NCBI RefSeq assembly: GCF_006345805.1
Contig: NW_021823590.1
Span: 1 to 21,950 of the forward strand
From: Octopus sinensis
Taxonomy: Eukaryota
Direction: 5' to 3'
Length of the DNA: 21,950 bases
A program made the translations under genes and the position numbers. This document shows, piece by piece, positions 2,619 to 19,050 of the stretch (positions within the stretch are counted from its first letter, which is position 1; each line of letters begins with the position of its first letter). Below the pieces are notes generated by a model that saw only the letters and a program-made list of their open reading frames with translations, did not search any database and was not told where the DNA came from.

Positions 2619-3071
2619 TAAGAGATTCGGATATGTCTGCGATGGAGTTGGGGTTTGTTAATGAATGTGGGAGGAAATTAGAATGATAAAGAAGTAAACA
2701 ATTATCTCATGAATTTCATTAGCTGCCAGCTGTTTCTGCTATAAGATGCAATGCACTCACAGTTGAATGAGCTTGTATCACCCTATGGCTTCATCGGAGC
2801 CTCAAACATGAAGCACTGTCCACTATCACTCATTCGCTTTTCCTGCCAACCAGTTTTTATACTTCATACTTCTCGATTTTTCTTCTACAGTTATCTCCTG
2901 ATGAAGAACTTGCAATCCAAACTCTAAATCTCACTACATTTTCTTTTTATTTTAAAGTTAATCTTATACTTATACTTATATTTGTCAAATGCTGTCCATC
3001 TTCTGCTGCCTTATCTCATTTTGTTCATTGCTGCCATAAGATATATATATATGTGTGTGCCTGTGTGTGTG

Positions 3072-3218
3072 AGTCAATCAAATCCACTAACTAGGCTTTG
3101 GTCGGCCCAAGGCTACAGTAGAAGACACTTGCCCAACGTGCCGAACAGTGGGACTGAACCCGGAACCATGTGGTTTGGGGGGAAGCTTCTGACCACGCAG
3201 TTCAGCCTGTGCCTATAC
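3072..3218 (-). mobile_element. tRNA-derived SINE, 5' half (family A, CORE-like)
   Basis: Reverse complement of the head at 10181-10345: B-box gggttcagtccc and ttgggcaagtgtctt motif. Confidence 0.9.
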
Positions 3219-3640
3219 ACAGGCTCGTGCACAAGCATATATGTATATATATATATATATATATATCTTGTATTCACATCCGTCTTGTGCGTTCACATTC
3301 CTGTCTTCTACCAAGAAATCTAATGCTTACAGCTTAGTTTTTTTTCTTGGGGCTGGCCGAGTTGGAGCAAATATCAGAATTGAACAGCCGAAATTTGCTA
3401 TGATGATTCGGTGTCTGACTGAAGATTGAAGGCTTCGAATGATTTGTCTGTGTTCCGTGTTCGTCCCTTCCTGTATTTCACGTTTCATTATATATAAAAA
3501 CTTCATTCTCATTATATATATATATATATATATAATATATATATATATGTGCGTGTGTGTGTGAGTGTTTGTGTGTGTGTGTGTATATATATATACACGT
3601 ACATATAGACATATAGATATACATATATATATATATATAT

Positions 3641-4109: not shown

Positions 4110-4918
4110 CTCACACATACACAACATACATACAAACATACATACATAGATAAATACATACATACATATAATACATAGATAAATACATACATACCATACA
4201 TACATGCATACATACATACATACATACATACATACATACATACAAACATACATACATAGATAAATACATACATACATACATACATAGATAAATACATACA
4301 TACATACATACATACATACATGCATGCATACATACATACATACATACATACATACATACATAGCATACATGCATGCATACATACATGCATGCATACATAC
4401 ATACAGCATACATACATACATACATGCATGCATGCATACATACATACATACACATACATACATGGCATGCATACATACATACATCATGCATGCATACATA
4501 CATACATACATACATACATACATACATGCATACATACATACATGCATACATACATACATGCATACATACATACATACATACATACATACATGCATACATA
4601 CATACATGCATACATACATACATGCATACATACATACATACATTCATACATACATACATACATGCATACATGCATACATACATACATACATACATACATA
4701 CATACATACATGCATACATACATACATACATACATACATACATACATACATACATACATGCATACATACATACATGCATACATACATGCATACATACATA
4801 CATACATACATACATACATACATACACACAAACATACATACATACATACATACATACAAACATACATACATACATACATACACACAAACATACATACATA
4901 CATACATACATACATACA

Positions 4919-4947
<29 letters not shown>
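4110..4947. repeat. About 830-bp (CATA)n array with CATG variants
   Basis: Direct reading; source of the HTYI/MYVC ORFs. Confidence 0.97.
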
Positions 4948-4949
<2 letters not shown>

Positions 4950-5300: not shown

Positions 5301-5328
5301 ATACATATAACGGATTTATTCTAATTTC

Positions 5329-5475
5329 AGTCAATCAAATCCACTAACTAGGCTTTGGTCGGCCCAAGGCTACAGTAGAAGACACTTGCCCAACGTGCCG
5401 AACAGTGGGACTGAACCCGGAACCATGTGGTTTGGAAGGAAGCTTCTGACCACGCAGCTCAGCCTGTGCCCATAC
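5329..5475 (-). mobile_element. Family A SINE 5' half, near-identical to 3072-3218
   Basis: Same motifs and same private variants as the 3072 copy. Confidence 0.9.
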
Positions 5476-5494
5476 ACAGGCTCGTGCACAAGCA

Positions 5495-5537
<43 letters not shown>

Positions 5538-5544
5538 TATATAA

Positions 5545-5760
5545 TATTAATTAGAGACAAAACCCACTATTATGCAAATCAACAAAGAAGACTTAATCCA
5601 ATACATAAAAAGTTTATATAATTAAATATAATTAAGATTAATTAAGATATGTGGATATCTTAATTAATCTTAATTATATTTAATTTATATAAAAATTTTA
5701 TGTATGGATTAAGTCTTTCTTTGTTTGATTTGCATAATAGTGGTTTGTCTCTAATTAATA
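5545..5760. repeat. Palindrome with 106-bp arms and a 4-nt loop (GTGG, 5651-5654)
   Basis: Arms 5545-5650 and 5655-5760 are reverse complements; most differences are homopolymer lengths. Confidence 0.95.
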
Positions 5761-6134: not shown

Positions 6135-6897
6135 TGTGTGGGCTCAACGCTCATCCCTTCTTCATCTAACCGTCCTCCTCTCTCCTCTCTTCCGCTCACA
6201 CCTACTTAACCCCACCCACCTCTCCTCTCTTGCTCTGGCACCTTACTTCCTCTCTTCACTCCTACCCACCTTCTCCTTTCCCCTTGTCCTTTCATCGTCA
6301 CCTGCTCCCTCGTTACTCCATCCCTACACATTCCAATGTCCCCATCCCTATACATCCCATCCCACCTCCACCCAAACCCTTAGACCCCCACCCTGGTTTC
6401 CCACACTCTCGCCTCCCCCACACCCCAACATCACCACACCACACACTACCACACCTCACACCACCATACCACGCCTCACCACATCACTTCACCCGCACAC
6501 ACTAGCACTGACCACTTCGCGGCACCTATACCATCATCCACACACCTACACATACACACACGCACACGTCAAAGTCACCAGCCCTCTTCCACACGCACGT
6601 ACACGCTCTCACATACACACTCACGCGCACCTTCGTTTTGGGATCACCGCTACCTTATTATCTCCTCTTCGTTCTAGCTCTCCTGTGTGGTCCCTCTGTC
6701 CGGCATTCGCCATGATAGATCGCTAGCCTCTAAACCTTTTTTCTGCTTTCTCTCCCTGTTTATTCTGTGTTCCTTTCTGCCGAAGAGCGTAGGCTCGAAA
6801 CGTAAAAGACTTTCTCTCTTCCCGTGCGTTAATCTAATACATCTGTTTGTTGTTCATACACCCGTCTTTGTCTTTGTTTTTTGTAAATTCTCACTAG
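6135..6897 (+). mobile_element. Probable Penelope-like element 3'/pseudo-LTR fragment (C-rich body plus hammerhead-like motif)
   Basis: 6735-6840 is homologous to 9333-9420, contains CCGAAGA...GAAACGTA, and ends in (TA)n. Family assignment is inferred from the motif and recalled resemblance; no RT or GIY-YIG ORF seen. Confidence 0.5.
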
Positions 6898-6911
6898 ATA
6901 TATATATATAT

Positions 6912-6951
<40 letters not shown>

Positions 6952-7517
6952 GTGCTTATATTGATAATTATATGGTTATTGACGATTAAGTCTATTTCGG
7001 CATATTTGGCATTGAAATTTAAACTTTTGCCCTTGTTTACAAGTTGTTTATATATTTAACCTTTAAAGGCATATTTTTAATATGCTGGCCATTGATAAAT
7101 TTTTTTCGAAAATTTTATCCTATATTAGATGTAAATTTAGTACTATTCACTTCCGGACTCTCTCACTCTATGAGAATTTTCAGTCCGATCACACGTCTCT
7201 CGAGGTATGCTGTGAAATTTCTATTTTGGATATATTTGGGGTACTTAAGTGTGCTCATGACTTAGTGTTTACTTCTTCCATAGGTATAAGTAAGTATCTC
7301 ATTTATTTTCTTATCGTATTTATCGCTGATGACGAGAAAATTCTAAATGAATTAACTCAGAAATTGGGACCGATCCGATAATAACATGTTTTTAGAAATT
7401 TCTATCGGCTTGCTTTCGAGAACGTGCTTATAGTGATAAATTATATGGTTATTGACGATTAAGTCTATTTCAGCATATTTGGCATTGAATTTTTTTCTTT
7501 TGCCCTTCTTCATAAGT

Positions 7518-7526
<9 letters not shown>
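6952..7526 (+). mobile_element. 472-bp-period terminally redundant element containing a hammerhead ribozyme (retrozyme-like or Penelope pseudo-LTR)
   Basis: Direct repeat 6952-7054 / 7424-7526 (gtgcttata...ggttattgacgattaagtctatttc...aagttg); (TA)n on both sides; hammerhead at 7320-7381. Confidence 0.65.
7320..7381 (+). ncRNA. Type I hammerhead ribozyme, near-intact
   Basis: Helix I TTATCG (7320-7325)/CGATAA (7376-7381); core CTGATGA (7326-7332); helix II GAG/CTC + 2x2 A loop + AATTC/GAATT; GAAA (7360-7363); helix III A-T, T-A, T.G, G-C with GGAC loop; cleavage triplet ATC (7373-7375). Main departure: C.A at the 10.1-11.1 pair. Confidence 0.8.
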
Positions 7527-7564
<38 letters not shown>

Positions 7565-7573
7565 ATGTATATA

Positions 7574-7983
7574 TATACAAGATAAGAAATTGGAGAAATA
7601 CATCTAAATCAAATATCAATTACCAGATAATACTCAATCACATACTTTATTAAACCACCACATAAGAGACTGTAGGGTTAAACATAAAAAAGCAGAACAA
7701 ATCAGTGTACATAAAGGAATGTACATAAAAAAGTGTACATAAAAGAGTAATGTTGTATATGTAGAATATATATAAAAAAGAGAATATTTCTTCTTATTAT
7801 ACAACATTACTCTATTATGTACACTTTTTTATATACATTCCTTTATGTACACTGATTTGTTCTGCTTTTTTATGTTTAACCCTACAGTCTCTTATGTGGT
7901 GGTTTAATAAGTATGTGATTGAGTGTTATCTGGTAATTGATATTTGATTTAGATGTATTTCTCCCATTTTCTTATCTTGTATA
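7574..7983. repeat. Inverted repeat with 186-bp arms (7574-7759 / 7798-7983) and a 38-nt spacer
   Basis: Manual alignment gives about 6 differences. Confidence 0.95.
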
Positions 7984-9845: not shown

Positions 9846-10180
9846 AGTCCAGCGTGAACATTTTTTTTAAACGGACATAACTTTTAATGTATTAGTTGAT
9901 TAACAATAACGATATCTGCAGTAGCAACACAGCAGCAACAGCAACAGCTACAAGAACAGGAAGAAGAGCAACGGCTAGAATAATATATGTCCTGCCCGAC
10001 AGAAACAGTTATTAGAAACTATTTATGAAGGGATGTTTCAGACAAGCTGAGTCTGTATTTCATTTCTTCTCACGGACAAATCCAGCAGATGTTCTAAGAA
10101 CAACTGCATATTTACTAAGCATGTTTGAGAAGACACATGAGGAGCTCGAAGCACCGCGGTATCCTATTGCTTCCATACTA

Positions 10181-10345
10181 GGCGTAGGAGTGGCTGTGTG
10201 GTAAGTAGCTTTCTTACGAACCACATGGTTCCGGGTTCAGTCCCACTGGGTGGCACCTTGGGCAAGTGTCTTCTACTATAGCCTCGGGCCGACCAAAGCC
10301 TTGTGAGTGGATTAGGTAGACGGAAACTGAAAGAAGTCCGTCGTG

Positions 10346-10380
<35 letters not shown>

Positions 10381-10627
10381 CTGTGTGTGTGTGTGTGTGT
10401 CTGTGTATATGTTTGTCTGTCTGTATTTTTCCCCCCAACATCGTTTGACAACCGATGGTGGTGTGTTTACGTCCCCGTAACTTGGCGGTTCGGCAAAAGA
10501 GTCCGATAGGATAAGCATTAGGCTTACATAATAAGTCCCGGGGTGTGATTTGCTCGACAAAAGGGTGGTGCTCCAGCATGGCCACAGTCAAATGACTGAA
10601 ACAAGTAAAAGAATAAAAAAAATAAAA
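10181..10627 (+). mobile_element. Full-length family A SINE: tRNA-like head, CORE-like segment, internal (TA)/(TG)n, tail, A-rich end
   Basis: A-box-like TGGCTGTGTGG (10191-10201), B-box-like GGTTCAGTCCC (10234-10244), and ACCTTGGGCAAGT as in the CORE domain of MIR-type SINEs. Many copies in the window. No clear TSD. Confidence 0.92.
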
Positions 10628-10748
10628 GTGTACTGATGAATCACGTGTGTTACGAACAAACATCTTCTACAAGTATGAGCTGTTCATCAATGATGTAAAA
10701 ATCAGCGTTCAGATATTCGCGTTAAAATATAGCAGATTATATTGAGAA

Positions 10749-11484: not shown

Positions 11485-11648
11485 TCACAGAAGTGGCTGT
11501 GTGGTAAATAGCCTGCTTATCAACCACATGGCTCCGGGTTCAGTCCCACTGTATGGCACCCTAGGCAAGTGTCTTCTACTATAGCCTCAGGCCGACCAAA
11601 GCCTTGTGAGTGGATTTGGTAGACGGAAACTGAATGAAGACCGTCGTA
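11485..11648 (+). mobile_element. Family A SINE 5' half
   Basis: agtggctgtgtggtaa...gggttcagtccc...ggcaagtgtctt...gacggaaactga. Confidence 0.9.
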
Positions 11649-11874
11649 TATATGCATAGATATATATGCATGTATGTGTCTGTGTTTTTGAGTTTAGAGC
11701 AATTGTGTTTTTCATAATTATAGTTAAAATCATAAAATATTTTCTACTTTTCAACGTCTTTTACTCAGTGTGTCTCACACATTTAAAAGTCAAGATTTTC
11801 TCCTGTGCTTGAGGTACTTTTACACGAAGGGGCAATGACCAAGTACCGTAACGGATATTATGGAAATATTCTTT

Positions 11875-12101
11875 TATTCTTTTACCTGTTTCGGTAATTT
11901 GACTGAAGCCATACTGGAATACCACATTGACCCCAGGACTTATTTCTTAAGCTTAGGAATATTCTGCTGGTTTCTTATACCGAAGCTTTAAGTTACGGGG
12001 ATATAAACACACCAACACCGGTTGTCAAGCGGTGATGGGGGATAAACACAGGCATAAAACACCCAGACACATAGATATATACATATGCAGACACACACAC
12101 G

Positions 12102-12161
<60 letters not shown>

Positions 12162-12326
12162 GGACGGCCTTTTTCAGTTTCCGTTTACCAAATCCACTCA
12201 CAAAGCTTTGGTCTGCTCGAGACTATAATAGAAGAAATTTGCTCAAAATGTCACGCAAGGGGACTGAACCTTGAACCATGTGGTTGGAAAGCAAGCTTCT
12301 TATCACATAGCCACAACTGCGCCTAT
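11875..12326 (-). mobile_element. Family A SINE, near full length, with internal (TA)n
   Basis: Tail, microsatellite and head are all present as reverse complements of 10181-10627. Confidence 0.85.
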
Positions 12327-12835: not shown

Positions 12836-13081
12836 ATCTTTTAATTTGGTTCAGTTATGAGAATGCGACTAGGCTGGAATGCTGCTTTGAAATCTTAGTC
12901 GATTGACTCGATCCCAGGACTTAGTCTATCGGTCTCTTTTGCCAAACCGTAAAGTCATGGGGATACAAACACACCAACACCGATTGTCAAGCGGTGGTGG
13001 TGGGGGTGGGGGACAAACACAAACAGAAAGACACACACACATACGCACACAAACATAGATATACATATATACATATATATA

Positions 13082-13136
<55 letters not shown>

Positions 13137-13275
13137 TTTCTGCCTACCAAATCTGCTCACAAGGCTTCGGTCGGCCCGACTTTATAATAGAAAACAAATT
13201 GCGTAAGGTGGGACTGAACCCGGAACCATATAGTTGGGAAGCAAGTTTCTTATCACACAGCCAAGCCTGCACCTG
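12836..13275 (-). mobile_element. Family A SINE, near full length, with internal (CA)/(TA)n
   Basis: Reverse complement of the head and tail motifs. Confidence 0.85.
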
Positions 13276-13280
13276 TCTAA

Positions 13281-14200
13281 GAGGAAAATTTGAAGCCTCA
13301 GGCCTTAAGAGCGTTTGAACGATTTGATTTACCGAAAGAGGAAGCCGAATTTCTCGCCTCAAACCGGAGAGGTGGTAAATTATTTGACCAAAATTTACTA
13401 ACAAGTCGAAATCAAAATAAAATATTAACTTGGCAATATACCTTATAGAAGATAATTTGCCCAGCTGTAGCATTGACATCATTCAACTGTTCACAAACTT
13501 GTTTCAGACTCAACCGACATCTTTTTTATGTAGTGTTAACATAATTGTGTCTTGTGTAGAGAGTCGTCTGTTTGATGCAGCATGAAGAATCTATAAAGGA
13601 GATCTACTCCAAAACGGTATCGTAAAACCATGCATCCACATTGCACACTTCGTCCACTTACAAGAAACATTATATAATAATCACTTAATACCGTATTCAG
13701 CCATCAATAAAATCCCTGAGAAGATCCCGAAGATATCGTCATACAAGTTGGATCGCCATATTAAACGTGATTAAATTAACTAAAATGAACGTCCGCTTGG
13801 TGATTCTAAGCAGCTACTACTACCAACTTTCCACGTTAAATTTGGTTTAATGGGAAATGTGGTGAAAGCAAGTGTAAAGTCATTAAAGAGGACGTCAGTA
13901 CGTTTTAGAATAATTCAAATGTGAAGAGGAAAAGTCAAAGAAATCGGTTCTCTTTTCCCCTACCCCTCACCTGTCTCTCCCCCTCTCTCCACTTCTTCAT
14001 TTTAATTTTCACGATTAAAATCCGAAAAGAAAAATGAAGAATGCCGATTTATACATGATGGCTTTTCCGAATATTTTCTGTAAGAATACAAATTACAAGT
14101 ATTTAAAAATGTGAAATACTTGTGAAATGACGAAGATACGATGAGGAGATGAGTAGCCGTTTAAAAAGATTATGGATAAGTTTTAAAGAAAATCAGCCCG
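13281..14200 (+). mobile_element. Decayed DDE transposase pseudogene, Chapaev3-like (CMC superfamily)
   Basis: Ordered, frameshifted peptides: LNDL..LPKEEAEFLAS; RLF.DAA*RIYKGDLLQNGIVKPCIHIAHFVHLQET; PLGDSKQLLLPTFHVKFGLMGNVVKA; KRLWISFKE. They match recalled motifs LNDLVRDL.L.K..AELL.SRL, WRLFIDSSK.SLKAVLLHNGN..PSIPIAHSVHLKE and LLPPLHIKLGLMKNFVKA. Transposase origin is more certain than the family name. Confidence 0.7.
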
Positions 14201-16442: not shown

Positions 16443-16600
16443 ATATCTATCTATCTATCAATCTATCTATCTATCAATCTATCTATCTACCTATCTATCT
16501 ATCTATCTATCTATCTGTCTATCTATCCATCCATCCATCCATCCATCTATCCATCTATCTAACTATCTATCTATCCATCTATCTATCTATCTATCTATCC

Positions 16601-16635
<35 letters not shown>

Positions 16636-16684
16636 CATCCATCTATCCATCTATCTATCCATCTATCTAACTATCTATCTATCC

Positions 16685-16752
<68 letters not shown>

Positions 16753-16794: not shown

Positions 16795-17425
16795 ATGTTG
16801 GGCCTTGATCTCTAAGCTACTGCAGTATATGGTCCTCACTCTTCACGGGATACCTGAGGTCTTTGGAACAGCGCAGTGACGTCCAATTCGGAGATTAATA
16901 TAGCCCTTGACGATATCTTTGGCAAGATTACAGGGAACCCATCAGGGCTTGTGGCTGAACTTGAACTCATTTCATGAATGGCTGATATTACATCCAATTC
17001 CTCTATTTCGATATTTGTGTAGTGGTGAGTTGCCGAAGAACTCATCAAGCATAGCTATTTACAAGTGTCCCAGTGGAATTGTGAAAACATTCTTGTAATA
17101 CACATTCAGTATTTTTCTGATCTTCTGGCGGTCTGCAGTCGATGAACCATTTTCTTCGAACAGTAGCCCTATCCTGTACCGTGCTGAAGCGGACATTATC
17201 GAAAATCTATAGAAGGCTTTAGGGTTTGTCTTCTTATATTTAACAGCCCTGGATTCTCTCCCCATCCCTTTTCATGGGAAGTCGGAGCTCATTTTCGATC
17301 TCGAACAATGATTGTTAGAGGTAGGATTCTTTGCTATTCCTTAGGGGCCAATTTAGACGGTTTGAGATTTTTGCTCGTCGTCTCATTAGAATCCTCCTAT
17401 ACTTGGGAATTATATTTTTCTGATG
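16795..17425 (-). mobile_element. CR1/L2-group LINE ORF2 fossil, RT domain apparently deleted
   Basis: Minus-strand peptides IPKYRRILMRRRAKI, KTNPKAFYRF...RIGLLFEENGSSTAD.QKI.KILN.YY..VFT.P and IEELDVISAIHEM..SSATSPDGFPVIL resemble the EN-RT linker up to the GPDG motif. They are followed directly by RIGRHCAVPK...RVRTIYCSSL, which resembles the ORF2 C-terminus. Confidence 0.7.
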
Positions 17426-17739: not shown

Positions 17740-18228
17740 TACACGCATACATACATATATACACACATACGTATATACGTACACACATACACATATATAC
17801 GCATATATTTATGCACATACATACATACATACTTTATATATATATGTATATATGTAAGCATGTATGTAAGTGTGCATGTATGTATGTGTGTATGTATGCA
17901 TGTATGTATGTATGTATGTATGTATGCATGTATGTATGTATGTATGCATGTATGTATGTATGTATGTATGTACGTATATATGTATGTATGTATGTATGTA
18001 TGCATGTATGTATGTATGTATGTATGTATGTATGCATGTATGTATGTATGTACGTATATATGTATGCATGTATGTATGCATGTATTTATGTATGTATGTA
18101 TGTATGTATGTACGTATGTATGTATGTACGTATGTACGTACGTACGTATGTATGTATGTATGTATGTATGTATGTATGTACGTACGTATGTATGTATGCA
18201 TGCATGTATGTATGTATGTATGTACATG
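17740..18228. repeat. (CATA)n/(TATG)n array with TACG and CATG variants
   Basis: Direct reading of the sequence. Confidence 0.95.
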
Positions 18229-18739: not shown

Positions 18740-18870
18740 ATATGTTTGTGTATATATATATGTGTATATATATATATATATATAATATATTATATCTATA
18801 TATATATATATATATGTGTATATGTATATATATTATATATATATATATATGTATATATAATATATGTATG

Positions 18871-18904
<34 letters not shown>

Positions 18905-18914
18905 ATATACATAC

Positions 18915-18966
<52 letters not shown>

Positions 18967-19050
18967 ATATATATGTACAAACACGCATACATATATGCAT
19001 ACATATATTTATACACATATATATGTATGTGTGTGTGTGCGCGTGTGAAC
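18740..19050. repeat. (TA)n-rich microsatellite
   Basis: Direct reading of the sequence. Confidence 0.92.

What the first reader, a model, noticed from the sequence alone, without database searches (positions are those of the whole stretch)
7320..7381. Near-intact type I hammerhead ribozyme whose two defects are both CpG-decay changes
Seen: all three helices and both catalytic core strands (CUGAUGA, GAAA) are correctly spaced, with an NUH site (AUC, cleavage after 7375) directly followed by the 6-bp helix I arm. Seen: the two imperfections, C.A at 10.1-11.1 (CpA 7358-7359) and a U.G in helix III (TpG 7365-7366), both revert to Watson-Crick pairs if they were CpG. Established: type I hammerheads with short, near-palindromic helix III occur in Penelope-like elements and metazoan retrozymes and can act as dimers. 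Inference: this is a recently decayed copy of a self-cleaving RNA family. It is in the sense orientation of the putative + strand pre-mRNA, so it could cleave an intron.
Basis: partly seen in the sequence, partly recalled or inferred. Interest (0 to 1): 0.85.

Follow-up and report, generated by a model that had tools for sequence, protein, structure and literature searches.

The report
Decayed hammerhead-like motif in repeat insert
The hammerhead-ribozyme-shaped sequence is really there and is too complete to be an easy coincidence, but it is most likely a dead, solitary leftover of a retrotransposon-borne ribozyme, which animal genomes carry by the thousand, so it is an ordinary find.

Summary
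At 7320-7381 (+) there is a 6-bp helix I, CUGAUGA, a helix II hairpin, GAAA, a 4-bp helix III and an AUC site, all at the stated coordinates and spacing. A motif this good is expected about 1e-5 times per window, or about once per 2.5 Gb.

It is not a demonstrable hammerhead:
- No Rfam hammerhead model matches, even at E<=10 on 79 nt.
- The hammerhead fold is not the predicted fold. Helices I and III pair with probability <=0.002 in context.
- No second copy could be found anywhere I could search.

The context favours a mobile-element origin. The motif lies in a 570-bp, 31% GC insert made of 1.2 tandem units of 473 bp, and (TA)n microsatellite flanks it on both sides. This resembles Penelope-like element (PLE) and retrozyme insertions.

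Read against published PLE hammerheads, C7333 is their usual unpaired base and G7334-C7358 is G10.1-C11.1. Helix II is long, as theirs is. One surplus A7359 then remains.

- Best reading (about 0.6): a solitary, decayed, inactive PLE/retrozyme-type hammerhead.
- Chance motif: about 0.3.
- Intron cleavage is unsupported, because no gene is detectable in the window.

The parts
7320..7325 (+). Helix I, 5' arm (UUAUCG)
   Evidence: Six Watson-Crick pairs with 7376-7381. A second TTATCG at 7311-7316 competes for the same partner in the predicted fold.
7326..7332 (+). Core strand C3-A9 (CUGAUGA)
   Evidence: Exact match. There are 5 CTGATGA in the window on both strands.
7333..7359 (+). Helix II hairpin. 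It has a C7333.A7359 mismatch, then 3 bp (7334-7336 / 7356-7358), an AA/AA internal loop, 5 bp (7339-7343 / 7349-7353) and loop UAAAU.
   Evidence: It forms with pair probability 0.90-0.997. In the PLE register C7333 is the unpaired base after A9, G7334-C7358 is G10.1-C11.1 and A7359 is surplus.
7360..7363 (+). Core strand G12 A13 A14 A15.1 (GAAA)
7363..7374 (+). Helix III (A-U, U-A, U.G, G-C) with loop GGAC. The sequence AUUGGGACCGAU is near-palindromic.
   Evidence: Pair probability is only 0.02 in isolation and <=0.001 in context, because the duplicated CCGAU (7370-7374, 7375-7379) offers a better register.
7375..7375 (+). C17, the predicted cleavage site (after 7375; triplet AUC)
   Evidence: A paper title in the reference list of PMC6155905 says most natural hammerheads lack AUC.
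7376..7381 (+). Helix I, 3' arm (CGAUAA)
6952..7058 (+). Direct repeat copy 1 (start of the insert)
   Evidence: 89% identical to 7424-7531 at a spacing of 473 bp.
7424..7531 (+). Direct repeat copy 2 (start of the second, truncated unit; end of the insert at about 7521)
   Evidence: There are 10 substitutions and 1 indel in 100 columns.
6952..7521 (+). Whole insert: 1.2 tandem units of about 473 bp, 31% GC
   Evidence: The RNA fold of one unit has z=-3.3 (linear) and -4.2 (circular) against dinucleotide shuffles.
6898..6951 (.). (AT)n microsatellite abutting the left end of the insert
7522..7577 (.). (TA)n microsatellite abutting the right end of the insert

Best explanation
The motif is a solitary, decayed relic of a type I hammerhead of the kind carried by Penelope-like elements (PLEs) and their non-autonomous derivatives, the metazoan non-LTR retrozymes.

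Inferred history:
- A short, AT-rich, non-coding retroelement RNA of about 473 nt was reverse-transcribed for a little more than one unit length.
- The copy was inserted into a (TA)n microsatellite. This gave the present 570-bp insert with a 108-bp terminal direct repeat.
- The two repeats have since diverged by about 10%, and the ribozyme has picked up at least two lesions.

In the source element the hammerhead would have trimmed multimeric transcripts, probably acting as a dimer through its near-palindromic helix III.

At this locus there is only one copy. It has a disrupted junction between the core and helix II, and its helix III is out-competed by other pairings. It is therefore expected to be catalytically dead and to do nothing for the host.

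Shown: the motif, its rarity by chance, the tandem and microsatellite context, and the lack of an Rfam match. Inferred: the element type, the insertion mechanism, the ancestral state and the inactivity.
For: - All strictly conserved core bases are present with correct spacing and three helices: C3-A9, G12-A14, A15.1-U16.1 and C17.
- The chance expectation is about 1e-5 per window. It is the only hit in the window even with loose descriptors.
- Independent context: the motif lies in the only direct-repeat structure in the window that is neither microsatellite nor a SINE (short interspersed element) copy. That structure is a 31% GC, 473-bp unit in 1.2 tandem copies with (TA)n on both flanks.
[quoted passage not shown] Metazoan retrozymes are 150-450-bp, low-GC tandem units with type I hammerheads (PMC7229834).
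- Features not used to find the motif match published PLE hammerheads (PMC4209133). These are a long helix II (3+5 bp here), an unpaired base after A9 (C7333) followed by G-C (G7334-C7358), and a near-palindromic helix III.
- PLE hammerheads occur in thousands per genome, mostly as solitary copies. Real relics should therefore far outnumber the roughly one chance motif expected per genome.
- Both defects sit in CpG-revertible contexts, which has p of about 0.02-0.05 by chance.
- The unit RNA is more structured than shuffles, with z of -3.3 to -4.2.
Against: - No Rfam hammerhead family matches at gathering score or at E<=10 on 201 or 79 nt. The only weak hits are C/D snoRNA models.
- In canonical numbering 10.1-11.1 is C.A. 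In the PLE register a surplus A7359 sits between C11.1 and G12. Neither is a described natural arrangement.
- The cleavage triplet is AUC, which most natural hammerheads lack (title cited).
- The hammerhead fold (-7.2 kcal/mol) loses to an alternative (-9.2). Helices I and III have pair probability <=0.002 in context, and the 'reverted' sequence also prefers another fold.
- No family evidence. There is no second copy in the window and no translated homologue in any of six frames. There is no related DNA in metagenome or viral contigs.
- The motif lies outside the duplicated 108 bp, whereas PLE hammerheads lie inside the pLTRs.
- No PLE reverse transcriptase or endonuclease remnant is detectable.
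- The two direct repeats could instead be independent copies of a dispersed repeat, as the SINE pairs are.
Confidence: 0.6

Rival explanations
1. The motif is a chance assembly. An AT-rich sequence happens to contain CUGAUGA and GAAA, and nearby short repeats (TTATCG twice, CCGAT twice) supply complementary arms. No ribozyme was ever encoded here.
For: - About one motif this good is expected per 2.5 Gb, and 24-300 with looser rules. A scan of many windows will therefore meet some.
- There is no Rfam hammerhead match.
- All four semi-conserved positions next to the core differ from the usual G10.1, C11.1, C15.2 and G16.2 (my knowledge of the consensus; G10.1-C11.1).
- Local micro-duplications make a helix I easier to obtain: TTATCG at 7311 and 7320, CCGAT at 7370 and 7375.
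- The hammerhead fold is not the predicted one.
- No relatives were found.
- Earlier relaxed-motif searches in the field gave mostly false positives (PMC6155905).
Against: - The expectation is about 1e-5 for this window.
- The motif coincides with the only non-SINE direct-repeat insert, which covers 2.6% of the window.
- The long helix II, the G-C pair after an unpaired base and the near-palindromic helix III were not part of the search, yet they match PLE hammerheads.
- Both defects are CpG-revertible, with p of about 0.02-0.05.
Confidence: 0.3
2. The motif is a working or weakly working self-cleaving ribozyme that cuts a + strand host transcript or intron after 7375.
For: - The core bases are complete.
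- A C.A opposition can form a wobble-like pair (my knowledge).
- Helix II is very stable.
Against: - The junction between core and helix II is disrupted, and the predicted occupancy of helix III is <=0.02.
- Even intact PLE-type hammerheads show no detectable cleavage as single motifs and need a second copy. Only one copy exists here.
- No gene, exon or protein homologue is detectable in the window.
- In vertebrates retrozymes are depleted from introns (abstract of 10.64898/2026.07.22.740005).
Confidence: 0.05
3. The motif is a box C/D snoRNA or its pseudogene. It would have a terminal stem (7320-7325 / 7376-7381) and a C box UGAUGA (7327-7332), sitting in an intron of a non-coding host gene.
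For: - The only Rfam matches in the region are C/D snoRNA models spanning exactly 7320-7381: snoZ169 at 19 bits and snoR12 at 13.5 bits. TtnuCD13 at 16.5 bits spans 7330-7380.
- The 62-nt length and the terminal stem next to UGAUGA fit the class.
Against: - All scores are far below the gathering thresholds (19 against 55) and E is 0.2-8 even for a 79-nt search.
- There is no CUGA D box. The only CTGA in the 62 nt is inside CUGAUGA, and the candidate 'CCGA' boxes are not flush with the stem, so no kink-turn can be drawn (by inspection).
- There are no C'/D' boxes.
Confidence: 0.03

Closest known systems
Minimal type I hammerheads of Penelope-like elements (Cervera & de la Pena 2014, PMC4209133)
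   Same: - Type I topology with a CUGAUGA...GAAA core.
- A longer than usual helix II.
- An unpaired base between A9 and the G10.1-C11.1 pair (C7333, then G7334-C7358).
- A near-palindromic 15.1-16.1 segment that would allow dimer formation.
- Occurrence as a solitary copy in a truncated, non-coding element.
- Expected poor activity as a monomer.
   Different: - A surplus A7359 lies between C11.1 and G12.
- Helix III is 4 bp with a tetraloop, rather than absent or 1-2 bp.
- Helix I is 6 bp, against 4-5 bp.
- The motif lies outside the duplicated terminal repeat.
- No RT/GIY-YIG ORF is nearby.
- No consensus family could be examined.
Metazoan non-LTR retrozymes (Cervera & de la Pena 2020, PMC7229834; Li et al. 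2026 preprint)
   Same: - A short, low-GC (31%), non-coding unit arranged head to tail and carrying a type I hammerhead.
- The unit RNA is predicted to be unusually structured.
   Different: - Only 1.2 units and one ribozyme are present, so no monomer can be excised.
- The 473-bp unit is slightly above the published 150-450 bp.
- No tertiary loop-loop signature is recognisable.
- Expression as circular RNA is unknown.
Canonical type I hammerhead (Rfam RF00163; schistosome Sm-alpha, newt satellite 2)
   Same: - The same core bases and three-helix junction.
- The same 6-bp helix I.
   Different: - It does not match the Rfam models at any listed threshold.
- Helix II is 3+5 bp with a 27-nt span, instead of about 4 bp.
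- 10.1-11.1 is not a G-C pair abutting the core.
- The triplet is AUC, not GUC.
Naiad-clade PLE insertions (Craig et al. 2021, PMC8557442)
   Same: - Insertion into (TA)n.
- A partial-tandem (pseudo-LTR) structure.
- Hammerhead core boxes that do not fit standard stem-loop descriptors.
- Remnants of this clade are reported in cephalopods.
   Different: - The published 'HHR_core' spacing is 7-17 nt; here it is 27 nt.
- No Naiad ORF remnant is present.
- The window's organism is not established.
Box C/D snoRNA
   Same: A terminal stem next to UGAUGA, a length of about 62 nt, and weak Rfam similarity.
   Different: There is no D box and no kink-turn geometry, and scores are far below threshold.

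Membership tests
Hammerhead ribozyme (type I) | Core strand C3 U4 G5 A6 N7 G8 A9 | tested here: met
   CUGAUGA at 7326-7332.
Hammerhead ribozyme (type I) | Core strand G12 A13 A14, the A15.1-U16.1 pair, and H17 | tested here: met
   GAAA at 7360-7363, A7363-U7374 and C7375.
Hammerhead ribozyme (type I) | G10.1-C11.1 pair closing helix II against the core | tested here: not met
   In the canonical register the pair is C7333.A7359. In the PLE register G7334-C7358 is present, but a surplus A7359 separates C11.1 from G12.
Hammerhead ribozyme (type I) | Three helices around the core, with helix I open | tested here: met
   Helix I is 6 bp, helix II is 3+5 bp and helix III is 4 bp including one U.G.
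Hammerhead ribozyme (type I) | The three-way junction is the favoured fold | tested here: not met
   The hammerhead fold is -7.2 kcal/mol against an MFE of -9.2. Helix III pair probability is 0.02, and helices I and III are <=0.002 in the 570-nt context. PLE-type motifs are also unstable as monomers, so this weighs little against a PLE origin.
Hammerhead ribozyme (type I) | Match to curated covariance models (Rfam hammerhead families) | tested here: not met
   There is no hit at gathering score or at E<=10 on 201 nt and 79 nt.
Hammerhead ribozyme (type I) | Tertiary contacts between helix I and helix II loops | tested here: inconclusive
   Internal loops exist at comparable distances from the core: AA/AA in helix II and a 2x2 loop after helix I. 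No known interaction motif is recognisable.
Hammerhead ribozyme (type I) | A family of copies with a conserved core and compensatory changes | not testable with these tools
   The source genome is not available. Nothing was found in the window, in six-frame protein space or in metagenome and viral contigs.
Hammerhead ribozyme (type I) | Site-specific self-cleavage | not testable with these tools
   This needs a transcription and cleavage assay.
Metazoan non-LTR retrozyme | Tandem array with at least two hammerhead copies flanking a monomer | tested here: not met
   There are 1.2 units and one motif.
Metazoan non-LTR retrozyme | Short unit (150-450 bp), low GC, non-coding | tested here: inconclusive
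   The unit is 473 bp, slightly above the published range. It is 31% GC and has no Pfam or protein match.
Penelope-like element | RT and GIY-YIG endonuclease ORF | tested here: not met
   No Pfam domain was found in any non-low-complexity ORF of 40 aa or more in the window.
Penelope-like element | Partial-tandem insertion forming terminal direct repeats | tested here: met
   108-bp direct repeats, 89% identical, lie at the two ends of the insert.
Penelope-like element | Hammerhead located inside the terminal repeats (pLTRs) | tested here: not met
   The motif at 7320-7381 lies 43 nt upstream of repeat copy 2, which starts at 7424.
Box C/D snoRNA | C box and D box (CUGA) brought together by a terminal stem to form a kink-turn | tested here: not met
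   The C box is present. There is no CUGA apart from the one inside CUGAUGA. Rfam scores are 13-19 bits against thresholds of 39-75.

The most novel reading that the evidence does not exclude
The motif represents an undescribed, still active retrozyme or PLE family of this (probably cephalopod) genome. Its hammerhead would tolerate an extra C.A tier between the catalytic core and the G10.1-C11.1 pair and would use an AUC site. That would make it a new functional core variant, producing circular RNAs from tandem copies elsewhere in the genome.
Probability: 0.04. Interest if true: 0.5.

Novelty: new member of a known kind. Interest (0 to 1): 0.25.

Why it matters
If the best reading is right, this is one more dead copy among the thousands of retroelement-borne hammerheads in animal genomes. 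Its value is in annotation. It would mark an old PLE/retrozyme-type insertion in a (TA)n microsatellite, and it would hint that such elements exist in this genome.

It would matter more only if the genome holds a family of such units with a conserved core. That would define a hammerhead variant with an unusual junction between the core and helix II. Such variants escape Rfam and standard descriptors, so they are under-counted.

The suggested role in cutting a host intron has no support.

Tried and rejected
- Rfam at gathering score on the whole window gave nothing.
- Rfam at E<=10 on 201 nt and on 79 nt gave only weak C/D snoRNA, miRNA and sRNA hits and no hammerhead.
- Rfam at E<=5 on the whole window gave 288 hits. 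The 150 listed held no hammerhead and were dominated by sub-threshold miRNA-model hits, mostly on microsatellite tracts, so this was uninformative.
- A self-BLAST of 6940-7540 against the window found only the 108-bp direct repeat and TA repeats.
- A six-frame translation of 6952-7519, used as a probe for translated copies of the repeat in 5.8 billion proteins, gave no hit.
- A composite of other window ORFs, including LINE-like ones, also gave no hit, so the organism was not identified.
- Exact look-ups of three ORFs around the motif were not on record.
- A pattern scan for the motif in metagenome contigs gave 0 hits.
- A scan for a 21-mer of the direct repeat gave 0 hits in viral contigs. 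It gave 1 hit in metagenome contigs, which proved to be a chance match in a bacterial intergenic spacer with no other similarity.
- Pfam on all non-low-complexity ORFs of 40 aa or more gave nothing.
- ARAGORN found no tRNA or tRNA-like SINE head.
- A literature word search for the SINE sequence found nothing. No supplement of PMC8557442 is held.
- The C/D snoRNA reading was considered and rejected for lack of a D box.
- An alternative hammerhead register using the second CCGAU was rejected, because helix I cannot then form (by inspection).

Full report
**What is there**

- Helix I is UUAUCG 7320-7325 paired with CGAUAA 7376-7381.
- CUGAUGA is at 7326-7332.
- Helix II starts with a C7333.A7359 opposition, followed by G7334-C7358, A7335-U7357 and G7336-C7356.
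- GAAA is at 7360-7363.
- Helix III is A7363-U7374, U7364-A7373, U7365.G7372 and G7366-C7371, closed by loop GGAC.
- C7375 is the cleavage-site base, in an AUC triplet.

After an AA/AA internal loop there is a perfect 5-bp stem (7339-7343 / 7349-7353). This hairpin is the one part that folds robustly, with pair probabilities of 0.90-0.997.

**Is it more than chance?**

I asked how often a motif at least as good as this one would arise. Under the window's composition the answer is about 9e-6 per window, or about one per 2.5 Gb on both strands.

Two looser descriptors give 3e-4 and 3e-3 per window. For those, 3000 block shuffles and 3000 order-1 and order-3 Markov sequences reproduce the analytic values, so the strict figure can be trusted.

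In the real window this is the only hit, even for the loosest descriptor. One window would rarely give this by chance. A scan of a whole large genome would be expected to give about one.

**Standard membership tests**

- Rfam finds no hammerhead family at gathering score. It also finds none at E<=10 when only 201 or 79 bases are searched.
- The weak hits that do appear are box C/D snoRNA models (snoZ169 at 19 bits against a threshold of 55). They are driven by the terminal stem next to UGAUGA. There is no D box, so I reject that reading.
- The predicted fold is not the hammerhead. The three-way junction scores -7.2 kcal/mol against an MFE of -9.2.
- Helix III has pair probability 0.02, because a duplicated CCGAU (7370-7374, 7375-7379) offers a longer alternative.
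- In the 570-nt context helices I and III drop to <=0.002, because a second TTATCG (7311-7316) takes the 3' arm and the two core strands pair with each other.

**Context**

- The motif lies inside a 570-bp block (6952-7521) that starts and ends with the same 108 bp. Copy 1 is 6952-7058 and copy 2 is 7424-7531. They are 89% identical at a spacing of 473 bp.
- This amounts to 1.2 head-to-tail units of a 473-bp sequence with 31% GC.
- The block is bounded on the left by (AT)n 6898-6951 and on the right by (TA)n 7522-7577. It reads as one insertion into a TA microsatellite.
- The only other non-microsatellite direct repeats within 2 kb in the window are SINE (short interspersed element) copies.
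- The unit RNA is predicted to be more stable than dinucleotide shuffles, with z=-3.3 linear and -4.2 circular.
- The two repeats differ by 10 substitutions and one indel in 100 columns. The insertion is therefore old, and about three changes are expected in a 62-nt segment.

**Comparison with the literature**

- Penelope-like elements (PLEs) insert as partial tandems that create pseudo-LTRs (pLTRs). The Naiad clade of PLEs prefers (TA)n targets and has remnants in cephalopods (PMC8557442).
- Metazoan non-LTR retrozymes are 150-450-bp, low-GC tandem units with type I hammerheads (PMC7229834). A 2026 preprint derives them from PLE pLTRs.
- PLE hammerheads have four described traits (PMC4209133): a helix II longer than usual (7-8 bp), an unpaired base between A9 and 10.1, a highly conserved G10.1-C11.1 pair, and palindromic 15.2-16.2 and loop 3.
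- They number in the thousands per genome, occur mostly as solitary copies in truncated elements, and show no detectable cleavage as single motifs.
- Read in that register, C7333 is the unpaired base and G7334-C7358 is G10.1-C11.1. Helix II has 3+5 bp and helix III is near-palindromic (AUUGGGACCGAU).
- None of these traits was used to find the motif. What then remains abnormal is one surplus A7359 between C11.1 and G12.
- A giant squid genome annotation lists 235 Rfam Hammerhead_1 loci (PMC6962438), so the class exists in cephalopods.
- I believe the window is from a cephalopod, because of a SINE that I recognise from memory. I could not confirm this.

**The CpG-decay claim**

It is plausible but not shown.
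- In favour: within the unit only 12% of A follow C and 16% of T precede G. Both defects being CpG-revertible therefore has a chance probability of about 0.02, or 0.05 with window-wide figures.
- In favour: in the direct repeats, one of four CpG instances has changed to CpA, against about 4.5% of other sites.
- Against: four CpGs inside the motif are intact, and the element's CpG observed/expected ratio is 1.19.
- Against: only one of the ten repeat substitutions is of the CpG type.
- Against: reverting A7359 gives C-G, not the G-C that natural hammerheads conserve.

**The intron claim**

- No ORF of 40 aa or more outside low-complexity sequence has a Pfam domain.
- Composite protein searches found no homologue.
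- Nothing here identifies a + strand gene.
- With one copy, a disrupted helix II junction and an unstable helix III, cleavage is unlikely. Even intact PLE-type motifs need a partner copy.

**Weighing**

Real PLE-type relics are expected in the hundreds to thousands per genome, against about one chance motif of this quality.

The insert context, the PLE-specific traits and the CpG contexts each add modest support. The absence of any Rfam score, the odd junction, the position outside the terminal repeat and the complete lack of family evidence pull the other way.

My estimates are:

| Reading | Probability |
|---|---|
| Decayed solitary PLE/retrozyme-type hammerhead | about 0.6 |
| Chance motif | about 0.3 |
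| Working ribozyme | about 0.05 |
| C/D snoRNA-like | about 0.03 |

Either way the find is ordinary.

Noticed in passing
7582-7973: A near-perfect palindrome or foldback of about 390 nt. Its arms (7587-7773 / 7784-7969) are 94-97% complementary. The DNA fold is -180.7 kcal/mol with z=-39.7. Each arm carries a 14-nt tandem repeat, TGTACATAAAAAAA, about 2.8 times. It lies just after the (TA)n that ends the hammerhead-bearing insert, is unrelated to it in sequence, and looks like a second, younger insertion into the same microsatellite.
   Followed up: partly
2990-3300 (+), 5311-5550 (+), 10150-10700 (-), 11489-11693 (-), 11960-12270 (+), 12922-13320: At least six copies of one dispersed SINE-like repeat, each with an internal or adjacent microsatellite. 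From memory it resembles an octopus SINE. ARAGORN finds no tRNA-like head, and no database or literature match was obtained.
   Followed up: partly
16839-17271 (-): Three adjacent ORF fragments look, by eye, like the stretch upstream of the reverse-transcriptase domain of a LINE ORF2. Pfam and the protein search gave nothing.
   Followed up: partly
whole window; e.g. 4115-4948 (ACAT)n, 16444-16752 (TATC)n, 17835-18224 (TATG)n, 18751-19028 (TA)n: Microsatellite density is extreme, with 94 TRF (Tandem Repeats Finder) rows. Many of these tracts give sub-threshold Rfam 'miRNA' hits (mir-297, mir-3149, mir-466 and others) with E down to 3e-10. These are artefacts of the repeats.
   Followed up: yes
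6136-6726 (+): A 46% GC, strongly C-skewed, CT/CA-rich low-complexity block lies just upstream of the insert. It gives a spurious 196-aa ORF.
   Followed up: no
7082-7381 (+): A 99-codon ORF runs through most of the unit and ends with its stop codon (7379-7381) exactly at the end of helix I. It has no homologue or Pfam domain and is not on record as a called gene, so it is probably a coincidence.
   Followed up: yes
7311-7325 and 7370-7379: Two micro-duplications flank the motif: TTATCG at 7311 and 7320, and CCGAT at 7370 and 7375. They create alternative pairing registers, which is why the hammerhead fold is out-competed.
   Followed up: yes
L001 2202-2222 (-): The only public-collection hit to a 21-mer of the direct repeat lies in a bacterial metagenome contig, in a spacer between ordinary bacterial genes. 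BLAST finds no other similarity to the window, so it is a chance match.
   Followed up: yes
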